From the IMG/VR virus record IMGVR_UViG_3300028654_000001, positions 310,001 to 374,000 of that record: a stretch of 64,000 nt of DNA; one strand, given 5' to 3'. The translations under genes and the position numbers were made by a program. A model generated the notes under the pieces. That model was not told the origin of the DNA and did not search any database. It saw only the letters and a list, made by a program, of their open reading frames with translations. Below are positions 14,453 to 30,132 of this stretch, piece after piece. Position 1 is the first letter of the stretch, and every line of letters starts with the position of its first letter.

Positions 14453-17400
14453 TAGGTGCTCGATGCGTAGGTGATGGTAAAGTTACCGAGTTCTACGAAC
14501 TCAACGTCAGCTGCCTCAATGTCATGGGATCCTGAATCCCCACGAACCACATAAGAAACTGTGTAAGTGTGATCAACAGGGAGGTCTACCGGACTCCCAG
14601 ATCCCGACAGGGAGATCACCACATGGTTCGCAGTCCTCCTCAGTAGCTCAGCTTGTTGAGTAGCTGCTGTTGTGAAACCGGCGGCTACCAGAGTAGCTGT
14701 ATCGGTATACCCTAGGATAACAGCACCCCCAGATCCGATGATGTAAGCTTGGTTAGCAGCCGAAGCCAAAGTGGAGAGCACTCCAACCAAGGTCATAGCC
14801 TCATCGTCTTCAAATACACCCTTGTGCTCTGTAATTAGACCCCCACCATCCGTGGTAGGTGAGGTCAAAGCATTGGTTAGGATGTAAACTACATTTGCTC
14901 CAATATCTAAGGATGGGAGATGCAAGTAGGCTGAGGTTATAGCCTCACGGAGCTTGCGTGACCCGTCCGCATAGGCCATCAAAGCCATGGGCAACACTAA
15001 GAAGCCGACACCCGGGGTCCCCTGGATAGCCCCAACGATACTGGACTGAGCCAGACCCTGTCCAATTAGTCTCGTGTTGGAGTCGTTGCTGACGTCAGAG
15101 CGAACAGCAGGATCAGTAGTATCTTTGGTTGACCCAGATTTTAGCTCCACCGTAACTTCTAGATCGACTAGATTCTCAATGGCCTCTTTGATGATTACAT
15201 CAGCCGTAATGTGACGAGTAGAGTTGACTGTCCTCTGGAGTTGTTGCAGAAGATCATTGATTACGTAGTTAACTGTGAAGTTCTCATCGTGGACATAGTC
15301 AACAGAGACTGTGGCCCCATTGACGATATCCGATGTGGCTGTCCTTTGGATAGCCGCTGGGGTAGTCGGAGTTCCTGCAATGACTTCATAGTCCGGGATA
15401 GTAGCTGTTGGGCCTTCGTATTCTATTGATCGATCAACACTAAAGACTCGAATAGTATCAGTATTTATCCCGATGCTTCCGAGAGGTATTGCTTGAGACC
15501 CTACCAATACATGGGATTCAGCATTCACTTGAATTGTATTGCCTGAGGGGACCCCATTAACTTGATTGATGGATAGGTAGTCGTTGGAGATCGTGCTTTC
15601 ACCATCAATGAGTGGGTCATCAACCTTGTAGAGAGCGTATCCAAGAGAGTTATCCAAAGCACCGGATACCTCTCCTATAACCGACACTACTCGCCGAACA
15701 GGTTGAAAGCTGAATATGAATCGATTATCAACACGGAAGCGGTAGTCAGCTGTCACCACATCATCGAAGTTCGTTACAACTTGACCTGATAGTGTGGGGT
15801 TCAACTTAAAGGTCCTGTAGTCGATGAGTTGGACTCCAACAAGGAGGTAGTCCAACCCTTGGGTCACATTCCTGACTCCGAGACCTTGTGTCAAGTTATC
15901 CAGGATCTCTGTGATCGGATTGTTCAGGGTGACTCGACTATCCTGAACCTGAAAGATCAAGTTAGTAGCATCAATGATGGTACATCGAATGTTGGTAGCT
16001 ACTTCGAAAGTGAAGGCAAACTTCTCAGTAATTTGTCGTTCCTTGAGACCTTGCGTCCAGATATCAACCTTGCCCCCAATGTGCTTGTGACGGACAGAAT
16101 CATAATCCCTCATCATGAGGGGGTCCCCGCTCTTGACTATCTTTGCCTTGACTATTCCAATTTGCTCTGCAGAAGTTGAGGCATACCCACCAGAGGTTCC
16201 ACTATCTACTGAATATCCAAGGAGGCATCTGGTAGTAAGATCCGCATTACTTTCGAGGTCAGACCCGAAGACGGTGGCATCGTTGTTGATAACTTGGAAA
16301 CCTGGAGCTCCAGATACGTTGGTGATCTGCCCAGCTGGTCGGTTACCATCTGAACCGGTTGTCTGAGCAACTATGTCAACGGTTATCTCGTAACGCTTGG
16401 TATCGAAGTTGAAGTAGGAGTCGGCTTGAGCAGCCAACATGATATAAGAGCCACCAACAACGAAGTTGACGGAAGGGATCCCAAGAGAGGAGTCCGCATT
16501 AGTCGATACAATGGTCCCAGTGGGTACCGGGAGGTCAAATGAGGGGCGCGTATATGTGTAGAAGGTTTCTTGTCCAACTGACGGCCTTCCAGGAAGCCTC
16601 TTCTTACTGATATTTCCAGCTAGCTTGTCGAACCCTGAGTCGATGATACTCTGAACTGCATCATCAGTTGTATACCCCAAGGCAAACTTAAGAGCTGTCT
16701 TGTAGGCACTCCCGGAGACAGGATCCGAAACTCCATCCCCATTGGCGTCATCGATCTGAAGAAGAGTAAGGAAACTTTGAGTACGGTGAACGAAGTCCAC
16801 CAAGAAGTAAAGACGCTCGGCTTCTGAGGTAAAAGGGTCAATCGAAACATCCCTTGTTGTCGACCCTGGGATCAAACTCACAAGAGCATCAACCCTCTGA
16901 ATCGAGTTGACGAAATCAGTCAGAACCTGAAACTGAGTCCTACCAGGAAGAGTTCTAATCGACGTGTCCAGGATGAGTGGTGTCCCCAAAACTTCTTGAG
17001 AGAAGGCACTCTCTATCTCGTTTCCAGTTAATGGATCATAATACACGCCAGTTACGACATAGTACAATGGATCTGTATCGGAAACAGCCGAGAACTGGTC
17101 ATCATTAATACTATCTGAAGTTCCCGATCGATTGTGCTGGAAGACGATGTACTCAATAAGTTGGTAGTCTTCGAGGGTAGACTTGAATCGGATGCTCTCT
17201 GTATAAGCCGATGTATTGTATGTAGTATCGAGTTGGGTTGCTAGTTCAGTACCAAACTCATCCTTTTGAGTCAGCTTGACCTCTAGAAATTGGCTACCAT
17301 TAGGGAATATCGTTTGATTAGCAGCAAATTGTGTAACCTTCTCATCAAAGGTTGTTGACTTATTTGTAACGGTTGCTGAATTGATTCGGTAGTATCCGGT

Positions 17401-17898
17401 AGTCCCACCTGCTGCTGTAGAGGCGTAGTAATTGTAACCTATGAAGTTGCTTGGAAGTGGGACACCGCTGGTACTAAATCTCTGTGCTGGCAAGGCGACA
17501 AATATGTTGACAACATCCTTAACCCTACTCACCTTGATTCCAGATGGGGTCTCCACCTGAAGGACATTCTCTTGCAGAACAAGGGTGACAGAGATAGTTG
17601 AGGCAACACTAACCCCACCAGCAATGTCTATTGTTCTAACTAGGATAGTGTTGGATCCAGGAGTCAATACCAAACCATCAGGGTAGCTAGATTGATTTGG
17701 AATAGTGAAGTTTGGGAGATCGAAGTTTACGAGGGTTGGATCTGAAACGAATGGAGCCCCGTTGATAGAAACCTGAATGTCTGAGGTTAGGTTGTCTACT
17801 GTCCCAGTGATGACAATAGCCTCTTGATTCGTTGAAAACACTAGGTTGGTAGTGAATCCAGAACCATCTCTATATGCAATCTGTGGAGCTTTGGCCAT
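14452..17898 (-). CDS. Baseplate J-like wedge protein (T4 gp6-like), extended
   Basis: VPTGTIVST, IVAQTTGSDGNRPAGQIT, VINNDATVFGSDLESNADL and GGKVDIW motifs of Baseplate_J. Confidence 0.9.
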   Translation of the reverse strand: MAKAPQIAYRDGSGFTTNLVFSTNQEAIVITGTVDNLTSDIQVSINGAPFVSDPTLVNFDLPNFTIPNQSSYPDGLVLTPGSNTILVRTIDIAGGVSVASTISVTLVLQENVLQVETPSGIKVSRVKDVVNIFVALPAQRFSTSGVPLPSNFIGYNYYASTAAGGTTGYYRINSATVTNKSTTFDEKVTQFAANQTIFPNGSQFLEVKLTQKDEFGTELATQLDTTYNTSAYTESIRFKSTLEDYQLIEYIVFQHNRSGTSDSINDDQFSAVSDTDPLYYVVTGVYYDPLTGNEIESAFSQEVLGTPLILDTSIRTLPGRTQFQVLTDFVNSIQRVDALVSLIPGSTTRDVSIDPFTSEAERLYFLVDFVHRTQSFLTLLQIDDANGDGVSDPVSGSAYKTALKFALGYTTDDAVQSIIDSGFDKLAGNISKKRLPGRPSVGQETFYTYTRPSFDLPVPTGTIVSTNADSSLGIPSVNFVVGGSYIMLAAQADSYFNFDTKRYEITVDIVAQTTGSDGNRPAGQITNVSGAPGFQVINNDATVFGSDLESNADLTTRCLLGYSVDSGTSGGYASTSAEQIGIVKAKIVKSGDPLMMRDYDSVRHKHIGGKVDIWTQGLKERQITEKFAFTFEVATNIRCTIIDATNLIFQVQDSRVTLNNPITEILDNLTQGLGVRNVTQGLDYLLVGVQLIDYRTFKLNPTLSGQVVTNFDDVVTADYRFRVDNRFIFSFQPVRRVVSVIGEVSGALDNSLGYALYKVDDPLIDGESTISNDYLSINQVNGVPSGNTIQVNAESHVLVGSQAIPLGSIGINTDTIRVFSVDRSIEYEGPTATIPDYEVIAGTPTTPAAIQRTATSDIVNGATVSVDYVHDENFTVNYVINDLLQQLQRTVNSTRHITADVIIKEAIENLVDLEVTVELKSGSTKDTTDPAVRSDVSNDSNTRLIGQGLAQSSIVGAIQGTPGVGFLVLPMALMAYADGSRKLREAITSAYLHLPSLDIGANVVYILTNALTSPTTDGGGLITEHKGVFEDDEAMTLVGVLSTLASAANQAYIIGSGGAVILGYTDTATLVAAGFTTAATQQAELLRRTANHVVISLSGSGSPVDLPVDHTYTVSYVVRGDSGSHDIEAADVEFVELGNFTITYASST

Positions 17899-17901
17899 AA
17901 C

Positions 17902-19032
17902 TTATTGAACCAATTGGTAGTTCGTGAGGCCTTGTAGGATGGCCTGCTGTTGAGTAGACCCAAGCAGATTATCTGGTTGAGGTATCCTGAGGCCTCGCAC
18001 AATCTCAATAGACTTGAAAGAGCGGTTCACCACAACTACAGTAACGAATATTACCGTAGGGTCCTGCTGACTTTGCTCAAGAGTCACACTACGAAGCTGG
18101 AAGGGGTATTCCTCATCAGAGACATACTGACCCACTTTCTCTTCCTGTTGCTTCTTAATGGACTGCCACCTATTGAATGCTGTGTAGATATCCGATGTGA
18201 TCTTGTTCTGAAGTACCCCACCGATGACAATCTTGCTTCCTATAGCCTCGATGATCGAAGTACCATACCAAGTGTTGAACGGATTAGTCCCAAGTACTGT
18301 GTAGATTATCTTCTGGACTTCCTGAAGAAGTAGTATCTCGTCTTGAACTACCGTTACATCCCCAGTAACCCCGTAGCGCCAATCATTCTCGATCCCGAGA
18401 CCACCGCACCTTCTACACTCACTACGAATAGTGGTGTAGCTAACCTCAAGGTAATTCAGGTCAGCTCGAAGTGGAGTGTCAAAAACAATCTGTCTGCTAG
18501 GTGTAAGGGTGAGGTTGTTGTTGACGAGACTCCAACCAGGGAACACCATCTTCCCGCGGTACTGGCGATTGGTCTTGATCCCGAGAGCGGTCGCCAGAGG
18601 ACTGGCACTGTCAATGTATATTGTAGCCGCCGGGCCTTGAAGATTAGTTTGGAACCCAACCTGGTTCCCAGTGGCAGTAAACTGAACCCCACTGACCCTA
18701 GTGGACAGCTGTAGAGCTACTTGGTTAGCCGAGATACGAACCCCTCCTGGAATGGTCACAACCTGCCAAGGCCCGGTATCCACTTTGAGCTTGATTGTGT
18801 TGTTAACCCCGGGGTTTATTGTAAAGGGAGCTCGAAGAGAGCCGACCGATTGGGCTGGAATGTAGACCCCAGTCGAAGGGACTTCGGCCACCCCATTAAC
18901 TCTGATTACTACAGAATTGATTGAGGAGATGGGTCTCAAGGGAACCGCTACCTGCAAGTCCCCTCTCATAAGCAGGTATTCCTCAACCACTAAATGAGGG
19001 CATACCTGATCAAGTTGACGATCATAGCTCAT
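17902..19032 (-). CDS. gp25/GpW-like baseplate wedge (sheath initiator) with N-terminal extension
   Basis: C-terminal LLQEVQKIIYTVLGTNPFNTWYGTSIIEAIG matches the gp25-like pattern. Upstream of baseplate J; contains CRRC. Confidence 0.8.
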   Translation of the reverse strand: MSYDRQLDQVCPHLVVEEYLLMRGDLQVAVPLRPISSINSVVIRVNGVAEVPSTGVYIPAQSVGSLRAPFTINPGVNNTIKLKVDTGPWQVVTIPGGVRISANQVALQLSTRVSGVQFTATGNQVGFQTNLQGPAATIYIDSASPLATALGIKTNRQYRGKMVFPGWSLVNNNLTLTPSRQIVFDTPLRADLNYLEVSYTTIRSECRRCGGLGIENDWRYGVTGDVTVVQDEILLLQEVQKIIYTVLGTNPFNTWYGTSIIEAIGSKIVIGGVLQNKITSDIYTAFNRWQSIKKQQEEKVGQYVSDEEYPFQLRSVTLEQSQQDPTVIFVTVVVVNRSFKSIEIVRGLRIPQPDNLLGSTQQQAILQGLTNYQLVQ

Positions 19033-19793
19033 GCCGTACCCCCACCAGAAGTTGTGTACCCGTCGCTGCCTCTTTCAATGACCAGACCCTCTGATGGAGC
19101 TCGAGTACCGCCTTGGTCATACGATGACATGGGCGCATATACAACCTTCCCGAATGGATCTTTTCCTTTATCATCAGCTATTGCCCGATAGCTAGGATCA
19201 GTGAATAACTGATTAACTAGAGCGATGAGGTTCTCAAGCGAACCATCAACCTCAACCGCGTTTGTTATGGAGGTCAGATTATCGATCTCAATTTGTAGTT
19301 GATCCGAGTAGTCAATAGCTCGCCTAACTTTCCTTTCTATTCTTTCTAGACGATCTAAATTTTCTGAAGCCCAATCCCTCATAGATCTCACTGCATTACC
19401 GGATACAGCATCAGCAAGGCCTAGAGAGGGTACAGGCTCCCCGTTCGAAAGTACCTTCGAGCTGTAGGTCTCGGTACCTTTCGTATAGTAAACTGGATCA
19501 CCCATACTCCTAACTTGCAGGTCGTAGAATGGGTCTCCACCCAAAACCTCATAAGCCGACATGAGCTTCCCGATATAGGTGGTGAACCCTGGCTGACCAG
19601 TAGCGTAACCGGTTGGTTGCCCTGCAGAGTCATAGGTGAACTGAAGAAATCCTATTCTCTGCTTTTCGACGGTAAGGTGATTTACCCTGGATTTTACATA
19701 GGTTAATTGAGCTCTAGTATATGTAACTAGTCTTTGAAACTGTGACCTATTGAATGTTCCCAACCAGTCCATCATAGTTAGCCTACCGATCAA
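19029..19793 (-). CDS. Hypothetical virion (baseplate-region) protein, coiled-coil
   Basis: 254-aa ORF tightly packed in the baseplate operon. Confidence 0.7.
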   Translation of the reverse strand: MIGRLTMMDWLGTFNRSQFQRLVTYTRAQLTYVKSRVNHLTVEKQRIGFLQFTYDSAGQPTGYATGQPGFTTYIGKLMSAYEVLGGDPFYDLQVRSMGDPVYYTKGTETYSSKVLSNGEPVPSLGLADAVSGNAVRSMRDWASENLDRLERIERKVRRAIDYSDQLQIEIDNLTSITNAVEVDGSLENLIALVNQLFTDPSYRAIADDKGKDPFGKVVYAPMSSYDQGGTRAPSEGLVIERGSDGYTTSGGGTA

Positions 19794-21961
19794 AAGATGA
19801 GGCTGAAGGCAGTCACAAACGCATCAATATTGGTTCCCGCATATGCCAGAGAGACTCCAGCAGAGTACCCACCTGGACCTGAAGGGGGTTTTGTACCACC
19901 CGCATTATCGATAGCCGAGATCCACCCGGGGATACCAGCGGATGTGCTAGGAACACTTAGGAAGTAGAAGCCAGCTGAAAAACTATCCAAATAGTTGAGA
20001 ATCTCGATCAAGTACTTGATGAAACGCTCTAGGATATCTATCTTACGTGCAACGGTATCGATGAATGCCTTGATCTCATCAATGGCTGACTTGAAAGCAT
20101 CGAGTAAAGCGTCGATACGGTTCAACAGATCATAGATGAACTGCCCACTCCACGGAACGATATCTCTGAGAAGGCTGACTGAAACCCAGTCAGGAGGGGT
20201 TCCACCAAGGGTGAATGACTTAATGAAAGTAACTACCTTTAGTAAGTTGAGACGTGTATTGACGTCCTTGAAGGCTGCATTCGACGTCACATAGATCTCT
20301 GGGTGATTAGATGATGGGAAGTCTTCTGGGATGAGGTTGAAGGCAGTGACCATCTGCTCAAGGGTACTGTTGCTACCCTTAAGGTTTCCAGTAGAGGGGA
20401 TGGGTAATGGAATGGCACCTTGGTACAGATCTCTCATTGGATTGAGCATCGCACTGTTCTCTAACAGGGAAGCCCCAACCAACTGAGCCAATCGGGCAGC
20501 CTGAAACTTCACCGAGAGGTAGTTTTGGACAACGTTAGGGTACTCCTCAGTTACAGAATTCTTCTCAATCGAGCTCAGAGCTGTGGGTATGATGTCTGAA
20601 AGAGCTCCACCAAGATTCATGAGAGATCCCTGTCCGACTTTGGTTGCAGGAGTACTTCCCGTGGGTCTTCCATTCGCGTCAAAGGTAGCTGTTGGGTCCA
20701 ATGGATTATGAAACCCAAGAGCAAAAGCCATCCTAAAGGTATTATCGAGAACGGTAATTACATCGAAGTTGGCTGGAATGTTCGGAAGTCTGCAAGTGAG
20801 TATCCCACTTGGACGCCCCATGATGACCGGATTGTTTGGATCACTACTAGGCCATCGCTGAATGTACTCACCAGTGTTTGCCTTTTGCTCTGGTGCTGGA
20901 AAGTCGATAGTATTGTTGACGGATACAACCAAGGGGCCACTGAATGCTCTAATTCGATAGTAGTAGGTCTTATCCTTATCTACAATACTATCCAAGTAAC
21001 GGAACTTTCCTAGCTGCCCAAGGATAAACGTTGAGGTTGCTTGGGTTGGATCAATGACAAGGTACTTCTCGAATACTCGGAAGTAGTCTCCATTCTCATC
21101 CCTGACAGGGATGGTCCTCTTGATGGCCTTCCCATGCTTATCTTCGAAGTTGGTCTCAGCATTCAGCGTTAGGGTAACTGGACCACCAGAGTTACTTGTC
21201 TTCTCGATGAGCCAGCTCTGAGGGATCAATTCACTTGAGACCGTAGCAAGCAAGTCCCCGTAACCTGGATCTGGGGGGTATTGATTGGTAGCTAAAGTCC
21301 ACTCAATGGAAAAACCCCTGAGTACTGCCCCGAATACTGATGCAACCTGCAGGATAGGATCGAAGTTGTTCTGTGAAGTTGTACCCCCTGCAACAGAACC
21401 TGCCCCTGAAACAGAGGAGGGTAAGGTTCCAGCAGGAAAGATCCTTACATTAGCCGGAGCAGCATACTTAGCGGATGCAACCTCTTTCCCAAAGAACCTT
21501 AGTAGGATCTTGATAAGCCGGAGCATCCCAAAAACTGTAGTAGCATCAGCGACAATAAGCACGAACCCGCTAAGCGTCTGCCCAGCTGCAGGTTGAGGCC
21601 GGAAAGGATCCTTTGAGTCAAATAAGGAGGCCTTGAACCTCTCCACAAAGGCCTGATATCCTCCCTTGAACCTATCGAAGTTAGGATCCTGAGTTGTAAT
21701 CGGAACATCATAGAGTGCAAACAGACCTGTCTGTTTCAAACTGTTGAATAATTCTTGGATCAACGTGAGAAGTGCTTGGACAATGGCGCGAATAGGATTC
21801 CCAAAGTCAATAAGAAATAGGCTGATTGTCTCAAGGAGAGCTTTAATGATCTCCATGAACGTAACAAGAGCTTCAAGAGAACTACGGACGTCCTCCATCA
21901 AGTCCTTGCCAGGAATTTTGATCTGTAGTGCCTCCCAGTCAGCCATATGATTTACCCACAA
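19790..21961 (-). CDS. Hypothetical virion protein with amphipathic helical termini and central FN3-like motif
   Basis: 723-aa ORF with YLDSIVDKDKTYYYRIRAF. Probable start ATG 21946 (MADW). Confidence 0.7.
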   Translation of the reverse strand: MWVNHMADWEALQIKIPGKDLMEDVRSSLEALVTFMEIIKALLETISLFLIDFGNPIRAIVQALLTLIQELFNSLKQTGLFALYDVPITTQDPNFDRFKGGYQAFVERFKASLFDSKDPFRPQPAAGQTLSGFVLIVADATTVFGMLRLIKILLRFFGKEVASAKYAAPANVRIFPAGTLPSSVSGAGSVAGGTTSQNNFDPILQVASVFGAVLRGFSIEWTLATNQYPPDPGYGDLLATVSSELIPQSWLIEKTSNSGGPVTLTLNAETNFEDKHGKAIKRTIPVRDENGDYFRVFEKYLVIDPTQATSTFILGQLGKFRYLDSIVDKDKTYYYRIRAFSGPLVVSVNNTIDFPAPEQKANTGEYIQRWPSSDPNNPVIMGRPSGILTCRLPNIPANFDVITVLDNTFRMAFALGFHNPLDPTATFDANGRPTGSTPATKVGQGSLMNLGGALSDIIPTALSSIEKNSVTEEYPNVVQNYLSVKFQAARLAQLVGASLLENSAMLNPMRDLYQGAIPLPIPSTGNLKGSNSTLEQMVTAFNLIPEDFPSSNHPEIYVTSNAAFKDVNTRLNLLKVVTFIKSFTLGGTPPDWVSVSLLRDIVPWSGQFIYDLLNRIDALLDAFKSAIDEIKAFIDTVARKIDILERFIKYLIEILNYLDSFSAGFYFLSVPSTSAGIPGWISAIDNAGGTKPPSGPGGYSAGVSLAYAGTNIDAFVTAFSLIF

Positions 21962-22073
21962 TAGAGCGCAACCATGAGGCTATGCACTCTAACTCTGTAT
22001 AAGTTGTGTCACTCTTTAGTCGATTCGCCCGATGACTAATAACTGCGATTACAGTCTGAAGTTTAGGATCCAT
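21939..22073 (-). pseudogene. 44-aa mini-ORF, remnant of an HNH-type homing endonuclease (C-terminal stub)
   Basis: Manual translation MDPKLQTVIAVISHRANRLKSDTTYTELECIASWLRSIVGKSYG* resembles the VISxRANxxKxDxTxxELxxIxxWL tail of phage HNH endonucleases. Overlaps both neighbouring genes. Confidence 0.65.
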
Positions 22074-22236
22074 AATGTAAACGTTCCAACTTGCGCCTAA
22101 GAAGAGCTAGCTCACTCTCCGTTGCAACCTTGGTTAGTTTGATGGCCTCGCGCATCTTGGTAACAATCCCGAACTCCTCCCGATACTCCCAGTTGGCTTG
22201 TGAAGGGACTTCAGGTTCTTTCTTTTCTTCAGTCAT
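22063..22236 (-). CDS. Small coiled-coil protein (57 aa)
   Basis: Below ORF-track cutoff. MTEEKKEPEVPSQANWEYREEFGIVTKMREAIKLTKVATESELALLRRKLERLHYGS*, with TGATG overlap with the upstream gene. Confidence 0.7.
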   Translation of the reverse strand: MTEEKKEPEVPSQANWEYREEFGIVTKMREAIKLTKVATESELALLRRKLERLHYGS

Positions 22237-25200
22237 CACTGCACCGCCAAAAGTTTGAGCATTGCGTTTAGAGTATCCTGTTGGGCCTTGATTCTGTTTT
22301 CTACGGCCCGTTTTTGCTTCACAAGGATCCCAGTCTCCAAGTTAATCCGTGAGTTTATCCACGTATATCTATAATCATAGAGTCTATCGCTCGTAGCCAA
22401 TACTGCTGTGATCTTACTGATGGCATCCAATACTTGGGACTTTCGGGCCGTAACTGTAGTGTACCGATCTTGAACTTGACTCCTATCAGTTAAACCCTGC
22501 ACCCAAGCTAGAGTGTCAGGGGTAACACTCAATGGTTCGAGTAGGGTTATCCAAGACGAGGTAGTTATAGCAAAGGCTATGACCTCATTAAGTAGTCCCG
22601 TTAGATCAGCAATCGATTGTGGTGTGATACCAAGTGCATTGGCGAAAAAGGTATTGAATCCAGCAACTTCATCCTGTGCAGTATTCCAAAGGGTGTAGGC
22701 AAGACCCTGAAGATCAGAACCTCCAAAAGTGTTGAGTGATCTACAAATTCGATACGTATTGGACCCCGATAGATCTGACCCAAAAGCAAAGTCCAGGGTG
22801 AGTTGAGTCTCAGAGTCCACAGAGGTCACCTGACGTCGCTGGTAGGTTGGACCTTGGGAAGCAACTACTGTGTAACCAGGAGTGACCCCAGAACTTATGA
22901 AGTTCGCACTCGAGTCAACCAGAACTACTCCAGACGTTGTAGCCGTGAAAGTAGGCCCGACCACATTGTCCGATGCAGTAACCCTAAAGTTGAACGGACC
23001 ACTACTTAACCCTGGGAAAGGTTGACTAACTACAAGATAATCAGGACCTACACTGTCTATGACGTGAAAGCTGGTGCTCAAGGCACTAATCTGAATCAAA
23101 TCCCCAGGGTGTAGAAGTGCCAACGGGAACGGGTTAGAGGTTAACGTAGTCCTACCAAAGTTCAACGTCCCAGAATCTGTATAAGGAGCGTGAAGAGAAG
23201 CCCCCGATTGAACATAACCCAACTCAGTATCCAAGTACCCAGAGAACCCAGTTCCGCTTTCACATAGGAACGAAGGATTGTGTAATGGATACCCCTGATC
23301 TCCATCGTCATCAAGAGTCTGTCCATATAGAGCTGGGAACTTCTTAGGAGAAGTGGTAAGGTTTGCAAAAACCACTGAACCCTGAAGGAGCTCCCCCCCA
23401 ATCGGAGCTTTACCTATCACCGGGATAGGGTTCAGGTAGATAAGATACCCGTTAGTGGTATCGAGAGTAACATCGATTCCAACTCGATAACTCTTCGGTG
23501 GATACGTCAGATCTGTAGTGCTTAAGTAAACGGTAGCCCCGGCTGGGATATGAACAGGGATGGTAGAGACACCAAGTGAAGTTGGTGAAACTGAGGTGAC
23601 TTCTAAGGACGTTGAATCAGAGATGTAGACATTTGTTGGGTCAGCTACACTTACTAGGAGCCCAACTTCGAAGGCTGGACGAAGTGGTGGATCTGTAACC
23701 CCAGCCGTAGTGTCAACATAGAGAACGGTGTCCCCAACTTCAGCATCTCTGATAATTAGGGCTCGATGAAATCTCTTGAAGAAGACCTGACTTGATCCGG
23801 TGAGGGGCTTGACCCCAAAGTTCATGATCGGATCCCCGGTCTTGGTTCCTTGCAGGATCACCTGAGAAACTTCAGCCACGGTTGGGTAGAACCTACTGTG
23901 AGTTCCAGATTGGTAGGCTCGAATGGTATCCCCAAAGGCCATACTAACGATATCGTCAATCTGGTTATTTGCAGTTAGGATGCTCGAAGCTAGGTTTCCA
24001 GTAGACCCATCGAACTTGAACAACCCATCGACATCCCCAACAACCCTACCGTCCATGTCACGAAGGACTTGCTCAAGGGCGTTGACAGAGTTGTTGTAGA
24101 GTAGAAGTGTGGCCCGAGCCACTATATCTTCATTGGCTAACTCACCTTCCTCGAAGTAAACAGAAGCGTTGCCTTGATCGAATAACTGAGGCTGAGAGGC
24201 ATTATCTACTCGAGGGCCACTTGAGGGAGCTGAAGAGCTCGCATCCGACTTATACTGCTCTGCGAGCTGCCCCCTGAAGTTGGTCATTGTCTCAACTCGA
24301 ACATAGAACGAGTCGGGAATGTAGGTTGTGAGTGAATCAACCAGTATCTGATTGAGCAAGCCATTATCTTGCGTTGGTACAATGGTATAGGTATAGGATG
24401 CCTGCAGGTAACCAGGGCCTACAACTCTATGTTTTGTATAGAGTATGTTGAGGGACTCCCCAGATGCCAGTGGGTTGGTAAAGTCGATCTTTCCAGAATC
24501 ATCGATCTTGAAGTCCGCGGGTGCTGTCAAGACAGTTCCGGGTTGCCCGTCAACCTTTCGATACACAATCACAGTATCAAGCAAGGTAAGAGGTGGGGTC
24601 TGAACTGGAATCGCTGGAGCACCACTCGTTTGGAGACTCTTCACGTTGGCTTCGTAGATCGGACGAATAGACCTGCGTAAAACGTAAGAACCACTGTACT
24701 CTCGAGCTGTAGTCTGAGTTATAGAAACCGTTGTGGTAGTACCATCAAAAGAGGAACCGGAAACTAGATAGAAGTCATTGAAGTGCCCGTCAGAAAAGTA
24801 TAGGATTATTCCAGATATATAGACACCAGACTGATCCCCAGATACCTGAAAGCTGTTCATTCCACGAGAGATTTGACTCGAAGGGACTCCTGGAGTGAAG
24901 TATTGTTGAATCGAGCCCGTCGATATGAATAGGTTTGGGTTAGTTGAGGAGTCGCCGAATACTTGAGGGGCTAGAAGATTGACTGTGGTACGATCGGTTA
25001 CAGGGTCATAACTAGGAGCTGAAAGATAGTATACCTCACTCTGCTCAATACGAATCAGATACCCATCTGGAAATACCAATCTTTGATCCCCGCTGACTGT
25101 AAAAGAAGTGGATCCATCGACTATCTGAACCGGAATCATGATTAGGTTAGGCTTGAGGACGGAAACAGTATTCTCCCCACCAAGAGCCTGCGTTATGTAA

Positions 25201-27269
25201 TAGTCAATGTAGACATTCTCATCTGGATTTACTATTGATCCATGGGGTAACGCATCAGTCACCCTTGTAAATCCAGAAGGAGTGGGTAGTATGTCAGGAA
25301 GAAAAGTGATAGTCGAGTTGATGAAGTCGATCTTGTACTGACTTGAGTCCTGAGGGCGACCCCCGCGAAAAACCGTTGGTGCTGGGTTCTGGGCAACAAC
25401 CCTACTAGTTTGGTTGAAGTTGAGTACTGATTGGTTAGTAGTGTGACTAGCTAGCTCTTTACGCACCAAGAATGTTGCAGTCTCCGTGGTCAAGACCAAA
25501 GGGACCACCGTCGGGTCCAGGTTATCCTGACTCGAGGGGTAGGTAATGAGGAGCTGATCCAAAGCTAGGAGACGAAACGTGGTCTGAAAAGTTCCTAGAT
25601 CAGCACTGACTCGATAATCACTCCCAGGGGTTAGTAGTTTTGTGATATTGTTCCGAACCAGAGACAGGGTAACGTTCGGGTCCCTTAGTTGTACAGAATT
25701 GAAGAATCGATCGGCTAGAACTTCTTGTGAAGTCCTAACCTCATAGGTTAGTCCTGTGGATCCTAAGGTAATTGGAGCATCAATACTCAGACTTGTTGTA
25801 GATGGTATCGAGAGGATATTGTAGACCCCAGGATTAGGTCCGTTTGAGACGATGAGAGGGTAGCCCGCTTGAACCGAGCTGAAGTCGGCTGATGTATCAA
25901 CGAACACGGTCGAGGAGTCCGGCGTGGCTCCTCCGATACCACTGGTGACTAGAGTACCTGTCTGACTCACAAAGGTTAGGATACCGGCTGTAGCATCCAG
26001 AAGGGCTTCTGATCCCAGAGCTAACGGTGGGCCACCGTTCAAAGAGAAGACAGCATTCGAGGCAACTACCCCAGGGTTAATCTGTACTGCTGCCGTTGGA
26101 GCAGCTAATGGAATGGAATACAGGTCCACTCTCTGAGCAAAGTTCAGTTGCTTATTGTCAAAATCAATTGTGTAACCTATCCCAGAAGGTGGAGAAGGGA
26201 TGTCAAGGCGCGGGAGGGTCCCGATAAAGGTTCCAGTACCCTGCTGTACTGCAACGCTGAATGGGTAGTTAACGGGTTCGTCAATCGGAAGCACAGGAAG
26301 AAACACAAAAGGGGACCCAATAATTGGACTCGCTAGCTTGGCATTGGTAACCGGATAGAATGCTGTGAGATCCCTTACCTCAGTCCCAGACCCACCAGGG
26401 TTTACTGGAGAACGGAAAAATCGAAATGAAACTCCATGTGCAGCATCAATCAGCACATCCCCATTGACCACCCAAGCCTGGTAGGCCCCGTAGTTTATTG
26501 CGTCACTCAAGTAAAACTTAATGGCAGATCCATTACTGAGAACTTGAACCTGGTCTGACTTCCCAGTTGTAAAGCTGTCGACAACGACAAAAGCTGAAAA
26601 CTGATGAACAACCTGGTCTCCGTTCATAGCCACGAACACTAGGTCATTCCCAGAAAGCGGTAGGTTGGGTGAGACCACAATCGGGGAAGTCGAGAAGCTC
26701 CCAATGAGTTGTCTTGGGAACTTCAAGTTATTGTTGAGTAGGACCCCATCAAAGTATACTGGTGACCCAGCATTATCGATAACGTCTGTTGGATAGAAAC
26801 GAATCAAACCAGTGTCTGTTGCCCAATTGAAGTGACCTGAAGCGGTTGGTAGCGGGAGGGTTGCCTCAGGGGCAGAGACATCTTGCTGCAGTGAAAGTCC
26901 AAACCCGATCTTAACAATGGGAAACTCAGTCGCTCCTGGTATAGGGTTCAGGTGAATTCTAGGGTCTGTCCCGAGAACCCCCATTCTTCCGTATTGAATG
27001 GGCTTGAAGGTTCCAACCGTCCCGTCGTAATCAAACCGTTGAACTCCACCCTGGTTCTGTGTGAAACCTAGAGTGACCTTAGGATCAGCTAGGTTACCAT
27101 CAACAAGAACGAGGGTTAGATAGTCAATTGGCCCAGGGTTGCTTTCGTCAGAACCGAAGGAGGATAGGTCTGAGGGGACAGCATAGTCATCAGGGCTCGC
27201 GGTGAAGGAACTGTTTGCCGATCCAACACGAGGCTTCTGTAGTAAGTAATGCTGTGTACTGACTGGCAT
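22236..27269 (-). CDS. Very large virion structural protein (baseplate/fibre region)
   Basis: 1677 aa, beta-rich repeats (DYRVSADLGTF, YKIDFINSTITF, FKIDDSGKIDF) and a helical C-terminus; lies in the baseplate operon. Confidence 0.75.
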   Translation of the reverse strand: MPVSTQHYLLQKPRVGSANSSFTASPDDYAVPSDLSSFGSDESNPGPIDYLTLVLVDGNLADPKVTLGFTQNQGGVQRFDYDGTVGTFKPIQYGRMGVLGTDPRIHLNPIPGATEFPIVKIGFGLSLQQDVSAPEATLPLPTASGHFNWATDTGLIRFYPTDVIDNAGSPVYFDGVLLNNNLKFPRQLIGSFSTSPIVVSPNLPLSGNDLVFVAMNGDQVVHQFSAFVVVDSFTTGKSDQVQVLSNGSAIKFYLSDAINYGAYQAWVVNGDVLIDAAHGVSFRFFRSPVNPGGSGTEVRDLTAFYPVTNAKLASPIIGSPFVFLPVLPIDEPVNYPFSVAVQQGTGTFIGTLPRLDIPSPPSGIGYTIDFDNKQLNFAQRVDLYSIPLAAPTAAVQINPGVVASNAVFSLNGGPPLALGSEALLDATAGILTFVSQTGTLVTSGIGGATPDSSTVFVDTSADFSSVQAGYPLIVSNGPNPGVYNILSIPSTTSLSIDAPITLGSTGLTYEVRTSQEVLADRFFNSVQLRDPNVTLSLVRNNITKLLTPGSDYRVSADLGTFQTTFRLLALDQLLITYPSSQDNLDPTVVPLVLTTETATFLVRKELASHTTNQSVLNFNQTSRVVAQNPAPTVFRGGRPQDSSQYKIDFINSTITFLPDILPTPSGFTRVTDALPHGSIVNPDENVYIDYYITQALGGENTVSVLKPNLIMIPVQIVDGSTSFTVSGDQRLVFPDGYLIRIEQSEVYYLSAPSYDPVTDRTTVNLLAPQVFGDSSTNPNLFISTGSIQQYFTPGVPSSQISRGMNSFQVSGDQSGVYISGIILYFSDGHFNDFYLVSGSSFDGTTTTVSITQTTAREYSGSYVLRRSIRPIYEANVKSLQTSGAPAIPVQTPPLTLLDTVIVYRKVDGQPGTVLTAPADFKIDDSGKIDFTNPLASGESLNILYTKHRVVGPGYLQASYTYTIVPTQDNGLLNQILVDSLTTYIPDSFYVRVETMTNFRGQLAEQYKSDASSSAPSSGPRVDNASQPQLFDQGNASVYFEEGELANEDIVARATLLLYNNSVNALEQVLRDMDGRVVGDVDGLFKFDGSTGNLASSILTANNQIDDIVSMAFGDTIRAYQSGTHSRFYPTVAEVSQVILQGTKTGDPIMNFGVKPLTGSSQVFFKRFHRALIIRDAEVGDTVLYVDTTAGVTDPPLRPAFEVGLLVSVADPTNVYISDSTSLEVTSVSPTSLGVSTIPVHIPAGATVYLSTTDLTYPPKSYRVGIDVTLDTTNGYLIYLNPIPVIGKAPIGGELLQGSVVFANLTTSPKKFPALYGQTLDDDGDQGYPLHNPSFLCESGTGFSGYLDTELGYVQSGASLHAPYTDSGTLNFGRTTLTSNPFPLALLHPGDLIQISALSTSFHVIDSVGPDYLVVSQPFPGLSSGPFNFRVTASDNVVGPTFTATTSGVVLVDSSANFISSGVTPGYTVVASQGPTYQRRQVTSVDSETQLTLDFAFGSDLSGSNTYRICRSLNTFGGSDLQGLAYTLWNTAQDEVAGFNTFFANALGITPQSIADLTGLLNEVIAFAITTSSWITLLEPLSVTPDTLAWVQGLTDRSQVQDRYTTVTARKSQVLDAISKITAVLATSDRLYDYRYTWINSRINLETGILVKQKRAVENRIKAQQDTLNAMLKLLAVQ

Positions 27270-27288: not shown

Positions 27289-27858
27289 TCAGACGATCTT
27301 ACCCGAACCTGATCCAGAAGACGGTGAAAGACCGCCGGCACCCACGATTGGAACCGGGAGTACAAGACCCTGAAGAGTGATCATGAGAGCTGTTGAGATC
27401 GCATTCGCTTTTTTGGCGGCTCCAGAACCGGTGATACCGACACTACTAAAGCCCTGCATCAAAGAAGAATAAGCGGACGAACCACTGACACGAGCTACCG
27501 CCGCACCAGCTCCAACTGAAGGATGATTCGTAATCACCGAACCCTGAAGCAAACCCAAAGAGATCCCAGTAGCCAACCCTGTTGCTTCGAGTGGAGCCAT
27601 TGGCCCTAGTTGACCGTTAACAGCATAGGCCCCTAATAAACTTGCTAAGAAGATGGGTTGAGGGAATAGAAAGGGGAGTAATCCAGTTCCAACCCCTACT
27701 AGACCTGCATCAACAGTTTTGACCGATAGCTTCTGAACCCAAAGTGAAATCCCCATTGCAACCCCAGAGGCAAACTTAGGGGTTGCAATACCAAGCATCC
27801 CACATCCGAGAAGAGCGGTAGTAATAGTAACGGTAAGTGCTGGAGCAACAATAGGCAT
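27289..27858 (-). CDS. Hydrophobic Gly/Ala-rich virion protein next to the spike
   Basis: 189 aa, two similar halves each ending in a Gly-rich strand; downstream of the spike gene. Confidence 0.65.
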   Translation of the reverse strand: MPIVAPALTVTITTALLGCGMLGIATPKFASGVAMGISLWVQKLSVKTVDAGLVGVGTGLLPFLFPQPIFLASLLGAYAVNGQLGPMAPLEATGLATGISLGLLQGSVITNHPSVGAGAAVARVSGSSAYSSLMQGFSSVGITGSGAAKKANAISTALMITLQGLVLPVPIVGAGGLSPSSGSGSGKIV

Positions 27859-27939
27859 CTACCCAGCCTTTTTGAGGACTGGTTCCTGAGCCCTCTCAAG
27901 ATAATCAGCGATACGACGGAATAATCGTTGACTTCGCAT
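27859..27939 (-). pseudogene. 26-aa mini-ORF, possible endonuclease VII-type homing endonuclease C-terminal stub
   Basis: MRSQRLFRRIADYLERAQEPVLKKAG* resembles the terminal L..A.xYL helix of EndoVII-family proteins. It fills the whole gap and its TAG abuts the next ATG. Confidence 0.45.
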
Positions 27940-27945
27940 GGCACT

Positions 27946-30132
27946 CTAAATAGATCCAATCAAAAGACTACCTTGTAGTGGTAGGCCGGTCAACCAATCC
28001 AAAGACGGGCTGCCCGGCGGCATCATAGGAACCCCTCTTGCTACACCAAGGACTGCTGCTGGGCCTCCAAGCATTACCTTTGGAGCGGTGAGGGCAATGA
28101 TAGTTGCAGCAGTGAGGTTCATTGCAAGACCAGCCGTAATTGCAATAGCACCCAGGCCTGCACTCATTGAAATAGCTCCAGCTGCTGTAGAGATAGCTAC
28201 TGCCCCAGCCGCCGTCGTAATAGAGATGGCTCCCGTACCAACCGTTACTGAGTAGGCACCAGCGGGACAATTGACAGCTACTGCCCCAGCCGCCACGGTG
28301 GTGGTCTTCGCTCCTACCAGAATGTTCTCTACGTGACCCCCAGCGAGGATTGTGCATACCTTCCCACCAAGAGCTACTGTCTCCTGATACAGCAAAGCGT
28401 AGTAATTCTGAGTCTTACCAGAGACAGTTGCATTCCAACCCCCCACATTCGCATTAAGACCATTGAGGCCGTGTAGGTTAATCGTACTAGCCTTGATAGT
28501 ATGACTACCATCAACTGTTTTCTGGTAGGACCCCTTGACTACTTGGAGATCAGTACCAGAGATATGAGTCTCATTGTTCCCTTGGACATCCACACTATGT
28601 GCCACATCATCCACAGAGTTACTGCCACCTCGGAAGATGTTCTTGATTGCCCCTCGGAAGTTGGTGGTAATGCACTCACCGTTGGCATTTGACCCAACAT
28701 CCAGGAATATCCCACCATCACAGGTTAGATGAATTGAATAACGATCAGGAGTACAAGCTCCAATACGAGCCTTAATGGCTCCTTCTAAGTTAGCCTCAAC
28801 AGATACATTCTTTGTCGAATAGTTCTCGCTCGAAGATCCTGGGACATTTATGAATAGTTTCCCCTGCTTAGAGACGGATACAGCAAACTGGTTCTTGGAT
28901 GCTGCACGAGGAGGCGAAATCCGGAACAAGTAGGCTGCGGCCATCGAGAGAGCCTCGTCGACCGTGGTGCTCGGCGGACGAAGGCACTCGTCCAAAGAAA
29001 ACCCGGTAGGGGCCGCAGTCTGGTCGAAGTCCTCGAATATCTTAGGTTTTAGTACCTTTCCGTACTGTCTCTGACCCAAGGTGGAGAACGGGTCATTCCC
29101 AACCACCGTCCCAAACACCTGTTCGATGTAGGCTCGAGGGCGATCAACTCCGAACCCATCGAGCTCCTCAAGTACCTCGGACTCAAGATCGGTATCGTGC
29201 CGAATCTCCATCCTACGTTCGGTAAAAGCCCTAAGAGTCCCACCATTTGTAGAATCTTCAAAGTTGGTTGCCGCATTCCCTGAAGCGTAGAAGACCTGCC
29301 TGCTGTTCGAGTATACGATGGGTGGGAATTCAGTGTTATCGTTGATTCTGTCGAGGGCCGCAAAGGTGGTCGGGTTGACGAAGGTGGATCCAGATACCCC
29401 AGCCGCAATCAAATCATCTCGTCCGAAGTACCTCGTGCTCTGATCTCGAACAATATTGGTATGGTTACCCTTGGAGTCAGTCTGAAATATCTCTAGGGGG
29501 AGGTTCATTGCCCCCCGGCGCACCGCTCCCGAGAATAGATAGGCCGCTGAGTCAGACTCAACCCTGTGAATAGATTGGGTGACTAGAGTTCGGTCTACAT
29601 CACGGAGCTCAAAACTGTCCCCTGCACGATTGAAGAGCCGAACATCCCTGGACATCAGGAACTCGGCGCCCGCCGCGGACATCCCGATGATGTCCCCAGG
29701 CTTCCCTTTAGCTCTCTTGTATCGAATGGTGGGTCCGTACATCTTCTCGACGTCATCCACATCCTCAGCGTCCACCTCTCCTGGGGGTATCGCTGCGAAC
29801 GGGTCGAACTTCAAACCCATAAGGGTTCCGACCGGGATGTACCCTAGGATGACTGCTCGGTAGAACTGCTTGCTAATCTTACGGTAACCAATGACAACAA
29901 CGGAACCCACTTCTGGGATCCCACCGAAGAAACTCCTCGGGCCTGCCATTGGCTGAATGAGATCCAATTCGAAGCGTACTTCAGACCCACTGATGACCTT
30001 CACGTCTGCTTTGAGGTGGATCTCATCTACTCGAGTGATGATCCCAGCCTTCAGCCCTGTGAAGTCGTTGTTGGCGAAGTCCGATTCAGGAATACTACCA
30101 GCAGGATGAGTCTTGCCCTTCATAAGTGTCAC
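27946..30132 (-). CDS. Baseplate central spike (gp5/gpV/VgrG-like)
   Basis: N-terminal OB-fold pattern (GIITRVD...GGIPEVGSVVVIGY...AVILGY) and C-terminal beta-helix repeats (SVTVGTGAISITTAAGAVAISTAAGAIS). Confidence 0.85.
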   Translation of the reverse strand: MTLMKGKTHPAGSIPESDFANNDFTGLKAGIITRVDEIHLKADVKVISGSEVRFELDLIQPMAGPRSFFGGIPEVGSVVVIGYRKISKQFYRAVILGYIPVGTLMGLKFDPFAAIPPGEVDAEDVDDVEKMYGPTIRYKRAKGKPGDIIGMSAAGAEFLMSRDVRLFNRAGDSFELRDVDRTLVTQSIHRVESDSAAYLFSGAVRRGAMNLPLEIFQTDSKGNHTNIVRDQSTRYFGRDDLIAAGVSGSTFVNPTTFAALDRINDNTEFPPIVYSNSRQVFYASGNAATNFEDSTNGGTLRAFTERRMEIRHDTDLESEVLEELDGFGVDRPRAYIEQVFGTVVGNDPFSTLGQRQYGKVLKPKIFEDFDQTAAPTGFSLDECLRPPSTTVDEALSMAAAYLFRISPPRAASKNQFAVSVSKQGKLFINVPGSSSENYSTKNVSVEANLEGAIKARIGACTPDRYSIHLTCDGGIFLDVGSNANGECITTNFRGAIKNIFRGGSNSVDDVAHSVDVQGNNETHISGTDLQVVKGSYQKTVDGSHTIKASTINLHGLNGLNANVGGWNATVSGKTQNYYALLYQETVALGGKVCTILAGGHVENILVGAKTTTVAAGAVAVNCPAGAYSVTVGTGAISITTAAGAVAISTAAGAISMSAGLGAIAITAGLAMNLTAATIIALTAPKVMLGGPAAVLGVARGVPMMPPGSPSLDWLTGLPLQGSLLIGSI

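What the first reader, a model, noticed from the sequence alone, without database searches (positions are those of the whole stretch)
21939..22073. Dead homing endonuclease shrunk to a 44-aa ORF that still bridges two baseplate-operon genes
Seen: an unannotated ORF MDPKLQTV-IAVISHRANRLKSDTTYTELECIASWLRSIVGKSYG starts inside the last codons of the upstream 57-aa gene, and its stop overlaps the ATG of the downstream gene (ATGGCTGA). From family knowledge, the tail matches the end of phage HNH endonucleases (..GNVxVISxRANxxKxxAT.EEL..I..WL), but the catalytic part is gone. Inference: an in-frame internal deletion removed the nuclease while selection kept start, stop and frame to preserve translational coupling. 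This would be a domesticated 'relay' scar.
Basis: partly seen in the sequence, partly recalled or inferred. Interest (0 to 1): 0.7.

Follow-up and report, generated by a model that had tools for sequence, protein, structure and literature searches.

The report
Dead homing-endonuclease scar between baseplate genes
A 44-codon reading frame wedged between two baseplate genes of a 512-kb soil phage is the leftover tail end of a selfish DNA-cutting gene (a homing endonuclease), and a second, even smaller leftover of the same gene family sits 5.8 kb away; this is an ordinary stage in the decay of such genes, with the unproven twist that both leftovers stay in frame with their neighbours.

Summary
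The ORF at 21939-22073 (-) starts 11 nt inside the conserved 57-aa gene, and its TGA overlaps the ATG of the 718-aa gene.

- **Homology:** residues 9-40 match the last 30 of 116 positions of a PacI-like HNH endonuclease domain (phrog_3322). The best hit has E 5.6e-9 against 1.84 billion proteins. The catalytic core is absent.
- **Insert is lineage-specific:** the roughly 113-nt insert occurs only in this genome. About 18 distinct relatives (25 loci) have 0-11 nt at this junction, and none carries an endonuclease there.
- **Insert is real:** a contig from an independent sample spans it without a difference.
- **Second scar:** a 26-codon ORF at 27859-27939 (-) sits at the hub|189-aa junction. 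Two relatives carry full-length genes of the same family (257 and 398 aa) at exactly that junction.
- **Operon context:** these two spacers are the only ones longer than 19 nt among 15 junctions of the operon.

Selection for a translational "relay" is not shown. Two in-frame scars have a 1/9 chance under neutrality, the fragment shows no sequence erosion (so it may simply be young), and no homologous short ORF exists elsewhere. Verdict: a decaying free-standing HEG, a new member of a known kind.

The parts
21939..22073 (-). 44-codon mini-ORF (the finding): a dead remnant of a PacI-like HNH homing endonuclease gene
   Evidence: Searches give the ORF. Searches give the homology of residues 9-40 to the C-terminal 30 positions of the domain.
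21954..22049 (-). Segment homologous to the endonuclease C-terminus (residues 9-40): the end of strand beta-2, the alpha helix of the beta-beta-alpha-metal motif (ANxxK) and the C-terminal helix (..IAxWL)
   Evidence: alignment A1. AF2 model of a full-length relative (strands 56-60 and 72-76, helices 77-85 and 88-101); top fold match is PacI.
21950..22062 (-). Insertion of about 113 nt, absent from every relative. It lies between the stop of the 57-aa gene and 3 nt before the ATG of the 718-aa gene.
   Evidence: relatives have 0-11 nt here; confirmed in an independent sample.
22063..22236 (-). Conserved 57-aa gene upstream. Its last codons (Tyr-Gly-Ser-stop) contain the mini-ORF's ATG.
19790..21946 (-). 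Conserved 718-aa structural gene downstream. Its codons 2-3 contain the mini-ORF's TGA.
27859..27939 (-). Second scar: a 26-codon ORF made of the first 6 and last 20 codons of a HEG of the same family. Its TAG directly abuts the ATG of the 189-aa gene.
   Evidence: (E 0.0058 among 23,584 frames of the genome)
27946..30132 (-). gp5-like baseplate hub gene, the upstream neighbour of the second scar
   Evidence: (phrog_694)
27289..27858 (-). 189-aa gene, the downstream neighbour of the second scar
22236..27269 (-). 1677-aa fibre-like gene lying between the two scars

Best explanation
The mini-ORF is what remains of a free-standing homing endonuclease gene (HEG) of a PacI-like HNH family (PHROG 3322). 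That gene once sat between the 57-aa and 718-aa genes of the baseplate operon of this 512-kb phage.

SHOWN: the insert exists only in this lineage. It encodes only the last ~32 residues of the nuclease domain: the end of strand beta-2, the ANxxK helix and the C-terminal helix. It lacks strand beta-1 with the SxDR catalytic segment and the CPxLG loop, so it cannot be a nuclease. HEGs of the same and of another HNH type occupy neighbouring gene junctions of this operon in relatives. A sister scar 5.8 kb upstream is an in-frame internal deletion of such a gene.

INFERRED: a HEG homed into the empty junction with its start overlapping the end of the upstream gene and its stop overlapping the downstream ATG. 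A later deletion inside the HEG then removed the core. Only deletions with both end points inside the HEG spare the two essential neighbours, which is why both ends survive.

Also inferred: the remnant inherits the HEG's stop-start overlaps, so ribosomes finishing the 57-aa gene can probably re-initiate on it and terminate on top of the next gene's ATG. This makes it a passive link in a chain of coupled genes. I judge it most likely a young, tolerated scar. An actual selective need for the frame is possible but unproven.
For: Homology: searches (best E 5.6e-9; every hit aligns the C-terminal end of the domain; profile positions 86-115 of 116 only; all six invariant columns of that region are kept), (full-length relatives hit phrog_3322 at 1e-33 to 1e-67, and also endonuclease VII and HNH phrogs).

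Fold: (pLDDT 92.7; PacI HNH enzyme 3ldy_A, probability 1.00, TM 0.61).

Presence/absence: 25 related loci, about 18 distinct, all with 0-11 nt at this junction; independent sample.

No donor copy in the genome.

Sister scar and full-length genes at that junction.

Third junction with an Endonuclease_7 HEG in the closest relative.

Operon packing: (15 junctions, spacers -4 to 19 nt, except the two scars at 87 and 116 nt).

Full-length family members end on the downstream ATG: G007 and G003 as TAATG, L037 as ATGCTAG, and 31 of 64 viral loci within -37 to +9 nt in a crude scan.

T4 precedent for HEG starts overlapping upstream ORFs (segF 11 bp, mobE UAAUGA): PMC2988022.
Against: No relative carries a full-length endonuclease at this exact junction, so the parent gene is unseen and the 5' break point is unknown. 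The ATG and the TGA lie in the flanking genes' own codons, so the ORF could be accidental: an in-frame start within the ~14 upstream codons is expected about half the time. There is no transcription or translation evidence, because no RNA run was listed. Divergence just upstream of the insert is raised (identity 0.60-0.69 versus 0.75-0.87 further upstream), but the relatives are too distant to call this a co-conversion tract.
Confidence: 0.85

Rival explanations
1. Selected translational relay. The scar is kept in frame because translation of the 718-aa gene depends on ribosomes that translate the mini-ORF and terminate on its ATG. Out-of-frame or complete-but-imprecise deletions are counter-selected.
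For: Both scars in this genome are in frame from a start at or inside the upstream gene's end to a stop on or next to the downstream ATG. The operon is built from stop-start overlaps with mostly weak Shine-Dalgarno pairing, -0.7 to -9.8 kcal/mol apart from one gene at -12.8. The insertion moved the ancestral GGGAG, carried in the Tyr-Gly-Ser codons, about 115 nt away from the 718-aa ATG. What remains pairs at only -5.0 kcal/mol, against -4.1 to -13.5 in relatives. Both scars keep more 3' than 5' sequence: 36 versus 8 codons and 20 versus 6 codons.
Against: Two of two in frame has a probability of 1/9 by chance. A Shine-Dalgarno pairing of -5.0 lies within the range of relatives that have no insert. 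The host's anti-SD sequence is unknown. No RNA structure masks the start (z -0.5). The fragment shows no erosion (56.3 bits versus 55.6 +/- 8.0 for intact domains), so an open frame is expected for a young scar without any selection. Only one lineage carries it, with no variants.
Confidence: 0.27
2. The 44-residue peptide has a function of its own. It could poison the dimerisation or DNA binding of incoming endonucleases of the same family (anti-homing immunity), or it could be an exapted small regulator in the way T4 Srd resembles this domain.
For: All six invariant residues of the retained region are intact and its profile score equals that of functional members. Full-length relatives also hit the PHROGs annotated 'Srd anti-sigma factor' and 'decoy of host sigma70', so the domain has been reused elsewhere.
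Against: No short homologue exists among 5.8e9 clustered proteins or among 1.84e9 representatives. The peptide is half of a beta-beta-alpha motif plus one helix and is unlikely to fold alone. Lack of erosion is explained equally well by youth. The second scar is much shorter and differs in what it retains.
Confidence: 0.04
3. The insert is not HEG-derived. It is a regulatory spacer (promoter, terminator or small RNA) or an assembly artefact, and the peptide match is fortuitous.
For: The ORF's start and stop are supplied by neighbouring genes, and 44-codon ORFs are common by chance.
Against: E 5.6e-9 in a library of 1.84e9 proteins, with all hits co-linear at the domain's C-terminus. There is no minus-strand promoter-like or terminator-like site in either scar, no Rfam match and no fold beyond shuffled controls. 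An independent-sample contig spans both junctions.
Confidence: 0.02

Closest known systems
Defunct I-TevIII of phage T4 (nrdB intron) versus the intact HNH enzyme in phage RB3
   Same: An HNH-family homing endonuclease gene that is intact in one phage and present as an inactive version in a relative (PMC1865063, PMC2790892). It is the textbook case of HEG decay in a phage.
   Different: I-TevIII is intron-encoded. The relic here is free-standing, lies between two structural genes and is reduced to 44 codons (26 at the sister site). No intact copy is known at its own site.
T4 free-standing HEGs whose starts overlap the upstream ORF (mobE UAAUGA; segF 11-bp, segC 20-bp, mobA 23-bp overlaps)
   Same: The same plug-in geometry: the HEG start lies inside or on the end of the upstream gene, interpreted as translational coupling (PMC2988022). 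The mini-ORF's 11-nt overlap equals that of segF.
   Different: Those genes are intact endonucleases, and coupling is discussed there as a way to limit HEG expression. Here the nuclease is gone and the question is whether the remnant passes ribosomes on to the next gene.
PacI restriction endonuclease (PDB 3ldy), a compact HNH / beta-beta-alpha-metal enzyme
   Same: Best structural match of a full-length relative's domain (Foldseek probability 1.00, TM 0.61, 21% identity).
   Different: PacI is a restriction enzyme. The relatives here are phage HEG-like proteins, often with the domain in tandem and with N-terminal zinc-ribbon or HTH regions. The mini-ORF keeps only the last third of the fold.
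Cyclical HEG life history: invasion, fixation, degeneration, loss (Goddard and Burt model, from my own knowledge; referred to in PMC2988022)
   Same: Empty, occupied and degenerate states of one junction are all seen among relatives at the hub|189-aa site.
   Different: The model does not predict that degenerate remnants stay in frame with their neighbours. That aspect is the only unusual one here.
HEG islands in ICP1-like vibriophages (PMC10055350)
   Same: Nuclease genes sit at junctions of essential structural genes, their content is unstable between relatives, and small fragment ORFs occur nearby.
   Different: The fragments described there are pieces of the cargo genes, not of the nuclease. 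I found no identity break between the two scars that would mark an exchanged cassette (75.8% inside versus 78-80% outside).

Membership tests
HNH / His-Me finger nucleases, PacI-like subgroup (PHROG 3322) | Significant sequence match to the family profile | tested here: met
   The match covers only the last 30 of 116 profile positions (E 3e-10); best E 5.6e-9; phrog_3322, E 0.0034.
HNH / His-Me finger nucleases, PacI-like subgroup (PHROG 3322) | Complete beta-beta-alpha-metal motif, including strand beta-1 with the catalytic SxDR(I) segment and the GN turn | tested here: not met
   Alignment A1: the ORF begins at the end of beta-2. Profile positions 1-85 are absent in every frame of the 113-nt insert. 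Full-length relatives do have the fold.
HNH / His-Me finger nucleases, PacI-like subgroup (PHROG 3322) | Conserved CPxLG loop and upstream helix of the domain | tested here: not met
   Absent from the ORF.
HNH / His-Me finger nucleases, PacI-like subgroup (PHROG 3322) | DNA cleavage activity | not testable with these tools
   Activity is expected to be absent because the catalytic strand is missing.
Free-standing homing endonuclease gene (HEG) | Presence/absence polymorphism at a fixed intergenic site among related genomes | tested here: met
   At site 1 the insert is present only in this genome and 25 related loci are empty. At the sister site there are two distinct full-length HEGs (three phage records), one relic and about eight empty junctions.
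Free-standing homing endonuclease gene (HEG) | Intact endonuclease ORF at the site in some genome | tested here: not met
   None of the 25 loci has one at the 57-aa|718-aa junction. This feature is met only at the sister junction (L034:305-1501, L024:5431-6204).
Free-standing homing endonuclease gene (HEG) | Co-conversion tract or target-site changes in the flanks | tested here: inconclusive
   the last ~60 nt of the 57-aa gene are 60-69% identical to the closest relatives, versus 75-87% further upstream. The changes include Thr to His and a Ser codon switch from AGT to TCC. Background divergence is too high to be sure.
Free-standing homing endonuclease gene (HEG) | Cleavage of the empty allele and gene conversion (homing) | not testable with these tools
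   The phage is uncultured and the element is dead.
Translationally coupled relay ORF | Start overlaps the upstream stop region and stop overlaps the downstream start | tested here: met
   an 11-nt overlap upstream and the 8-nt ATGGCTGA overlap downstream. The sister scar starts 6 nt after the upstream stop and ends TAG directly before ATG.
Translationally coupled relay ORF | Frame preserved more often than chance, or preserved across diverged lineages | tested here: inconclusive
   Two of two scars are in frame (P = 1/9). No second lineage carries either scar. Among 80 viral loci with this C-terminal motif only one clear pseudogene was found, and it is frameshifted (L122).
Translationally coupled relay ORF | Downstream translation depends on translation of the ORF | not testable with these tools
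   No RNA run was listed and the host is unknown.

The most novel reading that the evidence does not exclude
In operons whose genes are chained by stop-start overlaps, a homing endonuclease gene must splice itself into the chain of re-initiating ribosomes. When it dies it can be whittled down only to an in-frame mini-ORF that still hands ribosomes on. HEG scars would then be obligatory translational relays, kept by selection on frame alone rather than on peptide sequence. The two in-frame scars in this baseplate operon would be the first examples.
Probability: 0.25. Interest if true: 0.6.

Novelty: new member of a known kind. Interest (0 to 1): 0.4.

Why it matters
Degenerate homing endonuclease genes are expected from theory, but they are rarely caught at this late stage. 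This phage shows two scars in one operon. At one of them the empty, occupied and scarred states of the same junction are all visible among relatives, which gives a clean natural series for the decay path of free-standing HEGs in huge phages. It also shows that an unannotated mini-ORF between tightly packed genes can be read as a historical mark of mobile-element traffic. If the frame preservation proved to be selected, it would mean that translational coupling constrains how selfish genes can be purged from phage operons. That idea can be tested with a simple reporter construct and with a census of scars.

Tried and rejected
- **Domain libraries on the peptide and neighbours:** Pfam and NCBIfam gave no family for the peptide. 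Pfam also has no model for the full-length relatives. The PDB sequence search found nothing.
- **Phage DNA search:** blastn of 5 kb against INPHARED phages found no match.
- **Donor copy in the same genome:** phmmer, blastn, tblastn and a domain profile found none. The genome's seven classical HNH genes are unrelated to the fragment.
- **Context of the closest full-length protein (P0019):** it lies in an unrelated, higher-GC contig next to a helicase-like gene, so it is not the orthologous site.
- **Structured RNA, promoter or terminator in the inserts:** z-scores were -0.5, there was no minus-strand site and no Rfam hit.
- **Population variation to test selection:** contigs from four samples and one ENA assembly are all identical.
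- **RNA runs:** none was listed.
- **Short homologues of the peptide:** none were found in 5.8e9 clusters.
- **More scars in ten related genomes:** a search with the domain profile at E up to 10 found none.
- **Scars of the genome's own HNH genes:** nothing convincing was found.
- **Exchanged cassette between the two scars:** identity to the closest relative is flat across the region.
- **Shine-Dalgarno loss as evidence for dependence on coupling:** the window's value lies within the range of its relatives.
- **N-terminal resemblance:** MDPKLQT resembles the MMAKLCT-type N-termini of some family members. At 4 of 7 residues, three of them fixed by the overlap, this is too weak to use.
Full report
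**What is in the sequence.** The window is bases 310001-374000 of a 512,571-bp virus record with direct terminal repeats, assembled from a rhizosphere metagenome. On the minus strand, a long and tightly packed structural operon runs from about 41974 down to 9411. It includes a gp5-like hub (27946-30132, phrog_694), a gp6-like wedge protein (14452-17898, phrog_6, E 6e-16) and another wedge subunit (17902-19032, phrog_43). "Baseplate operon" is therefore a fair description.

- Its ATG lies in the Tyr-Gly codons at the end of a conserved 57-aa gene, with an 11-nt overlap with that gene's TAA.
- Its TGA lies in codons 2-3 of the 718-aa gene, giving the ATGGCTGA overlap.

**Is the endonuclease similarity real?** Yes.
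- A phmmer search of the 44 residues against 1.84 billion representative proteins gave 21 non-self hits below E 1e-3, the best at 5.6e-9. Every hit aligned residues 8/9 to 35-41 with the C-terminal end of a repeated domain.
- Those proteins are 141-411 aa long, apart from one of 1123 aa, and most carry the domain twice. Pfam does not cover them. They hit phrog_3322 "endonuclease" at 1e-33 to 1e-67, and more weakly the endonuclease VII and HNH PHROGs.
- An AlphaFold model of one domain has mean pLDDT 92.7 and a strand-strand-helix core. Its top PDB match is the HNH restriction enzyme PacI, with probability 1.00 and TM 0.61.
- A 116-position profile of the domain matches the mini-ORF only at positions 86-115.
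- In alignment A1 the ORF starts at the end of the second strand. It then carries the ANxxK helix and the C-terminal helix. The CPxLG loop and the SxDR strand are missing.

The "dead" part of the claim is therefore shown: no frame of the insert encodes the rest of the domain.

**Is it an insertion?** I fetched the junction from 13 IMG/VR loci and 12 metagenome loci whose 718-aa protein is 57-90% identical to the window's, about 18 distinct sequences. In all of them the 57-aa gene ends ...TYGS-stop and the next ATG follows after 0-11 nt.
- The window alone has about 113 extra nucleotides at 21950-22062.
- The insert is real. A 680-nt contig from another sample covers 21545-22224 with no difference, and an ENA assembly is identical over 4.2 kb.
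- No other copy of the fragment, and no full-length member of this family, exists in the 512-kb genome.

**A second scar supplies the missing comparison.** While looking for family members in relatives, I found a full-length 257-aa gene in a 380-kb relative (L024:5431-6204).
- Another relative has a 398-aa tandem-domain gene at the same junction (L034:305-1501).
- About eight other relatives, including the closest ones, have 1-17 nt there.
- The window has 87 nt there. They form a 26-codon ORF (27859-27939) that reads MRSQRL, then FRRIADYLE..., ending ...G-stop.
- The 398-aa gene begins MQSKRL and ends ...FRRIADYIEAAQRPLFRETG-stop. That is 13 of 18 nt identical at the start and 13 of 21 residues identical at the end.
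- Searched against all 23,584 frames of at least 12 codons in the genome, that gene's C-terminus picks out this spot at E 0.0058.

This scar is therefore a demonstrated in-frame internal deletion. It kept the parent's first 6 and last 20 codons, with its stop abutting the next gene's ATG.

Two further observations fit this picture.
- The closest relative carries a different HEG (Endonuclease_7, E 1e-18) at a third junction, 718-aa|254-aa, where the window has a 4-nt overlap. Junctions of this operon are evidently recurrent landing sites for such genes.
- Of the 15 junctions in the window's operon, 13 have spacers of -4 to 19 nt. The only exceptions are the two scars, at 87 and 116 nt.

**How it most likely came about.** The steps below are inferred.
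- A HEG of a W-type sublineage (..IAxWL) homed into the empty 57-aa|718-aa junction. The site-2 genes belong to a different sublineage (..IAxYL), so the two scars reflect independent invasions.
- Full-length members of the family typically end on the downstream start codon: TAATG twice, ATGCTAG once, and 31 of 64 viral loci within -37 to +9 nt in a crude scan.
- T4 free-standing HEGs often start inside the upstream ORF, and segF does so by the same 11 bp (PMC2988022).
- A later deletion within the HEG removed the core. Deletions that reach beyond either end of the HEG would damage an essential neighbour, so the ends survive.

**What is not shown.** The claim that selection keeps the start, stop and frame does not follow from the data.
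- The ATG is made by the upstream gene's own Tyr-Gly codons, and several relatives without the insert also have TAT-GG there. The TGA is made by the downstream gene's own codons.
- Given an open frame across the junction, an in-frame start within the roughly 14 available codons is expected about half the time.
- Two scars in frame have a probability of 1/9.
- The 30-residue fragment scores 56.3 bits on a C-terminal sub-profile. Intact domains left out in turn score 55.6 +/- 8.0 (n = 38). The fragment also keeps all six invariant residues. It has therefore not begun to erode. That fits a recent deletion, for which an open frame needs no explanation, as well as it fits purifying selection.
- There is no variation among samples, no short homologue anywhere and no listed RNA data.

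Arguments that keep the relay idea alive:
- The operon is built from stop-start overlaps with mostly weak Shine-Dalgarno pairing.
- The insertion displaced the ancestral GGGAG from in front of the 718-aa gene, although the remaining -5.0 kcal/mol lies within the range of relatives.
- Both scars keep more 3' than 5' sequence.

**Other readings excluded.** Neither spacer has a promoter-like or terminator-like site on the coding strand, an Rfam match, or a fold better than shuffled controls. Identity to the closest relative is flat across the 5.8 kb between the scars, so there is no sign of an exchanged cassette.

**Comparison with what is known.**
- The closest precedent for a dead HNH homing endonuclease in a phage is T4's defunct I-TevIII, which is intact in RB3 (PMC1865063, PMC2790892).
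- The overlap geometry matches T4's mobE and seg genes (PMC2988022).
- The empty, occupied and degenerate states at one junction fit the cyclical HEG life history.
- The enzyme fold is PacI-like HNH.
- The mini-ORF fails the defining features of a nuclease. It passes the presence/absence criterion of a HEG, so it should be filed as a HEG remnant and not as an endonuclease.

**Verdict.** The identification as a dead endonuclease remnant is supported with about 0.85 confidence. The in-frame deletion model is shown at the sister scar and is plausible here. The "domesticated relay" remains a hypothesis at about 0.25. This is a new member of a known kind, of moderate interest, mainly because two in-frame scars in one coupled operon make a testable case.

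Noticed in passing
window 27859-27939 (-): A second HEG scar: a 26-codon ORF in the 87-nt spacer between the hub gene and the 189-aa gene. It is made of the first 6 and last 20 codons of a gene that is full length (398 aa and 257 aa) at the same junction in two relatives.
   Followed up: yes
L008:6072-6755 (closest relative, IMGVR_UViG_3300037067_003807): An Endonuclease_7 (PF02945, E 1e-18) gene sits between the 718-aa and 254-aa genes, where the window has a 4-nt overlap (19790-19793). This is a third HEG landing site in the same operon.
   Followed up: partly
window 50932-52842 (-), 636-aa ORF: The N-terminal HTH-like region of the site-2 endonucleases of relatives (residues about 6-54 and 23-93 of the 257-aa gene) matches this window protein at two places, residues 12-60 and 432-503 (E 1e-9). 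The putative DNA-binding module is therefore shared with a large phage protein of unknown role.
   Followed up: no
proteins P0002, P0015, P0019, P0021 (full-length relatives): Besides the endonuclease PHROGs, they hit phrog_1400 'Srd anti-sigma factor' and phrog_4592 'decoy of host sigma70' (E down to 1e-13). This suggests that T4 Srd-like proteins derive from this nuclease domain.
   Followed up: no
protein P0021 (173 aa, metagenomic): Its first domain copy consists of an N-terminal MMKVCSKCG joined directly to GYVIGNIAVIS... That is an internal deletion of the core much like the window's scar, followed by a complete second domain.
   Followed up: no
L122:1045-1593: A viral locus in which only the C-terminal 36 positions of the domain are in frame, preceded by Arg-rich sequence that looks out of frame. 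It is probably a frameshifted pseudogene of the same family, and it was the only such case among 80 loci.
   Followed up: partly
window 22063-22085 (-), end of the 57-aa gene: The last codons differ from all close relatives far more than the rest of the gene does: Thr to His, Ser codon AGT to TCC, stop TGA to TAA, and loss of the GGGAG element. This could be a co-conversion or target-immunity footprint of the vanished HEG.
   Followed up: partly
window 22423-22707 (-), 3' part of the 1677-aa gene: A region with no DNA match to the closest relative, 284 nt here versus 512 nt there. The orthologue is 2059 aa in another relative, so this fibre-like gene is length-variable.
   Followed up: no
genome G000:C1:464203-464421 (-), outside the window: A 73-codon frame weakly similar (E 0.02) to the C-terminal part of a nearby classical HNH gene (466407-466904). 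It may be another nuclease fragment in a region dense with HNH genes (456-476 kb).
   Followed up: no
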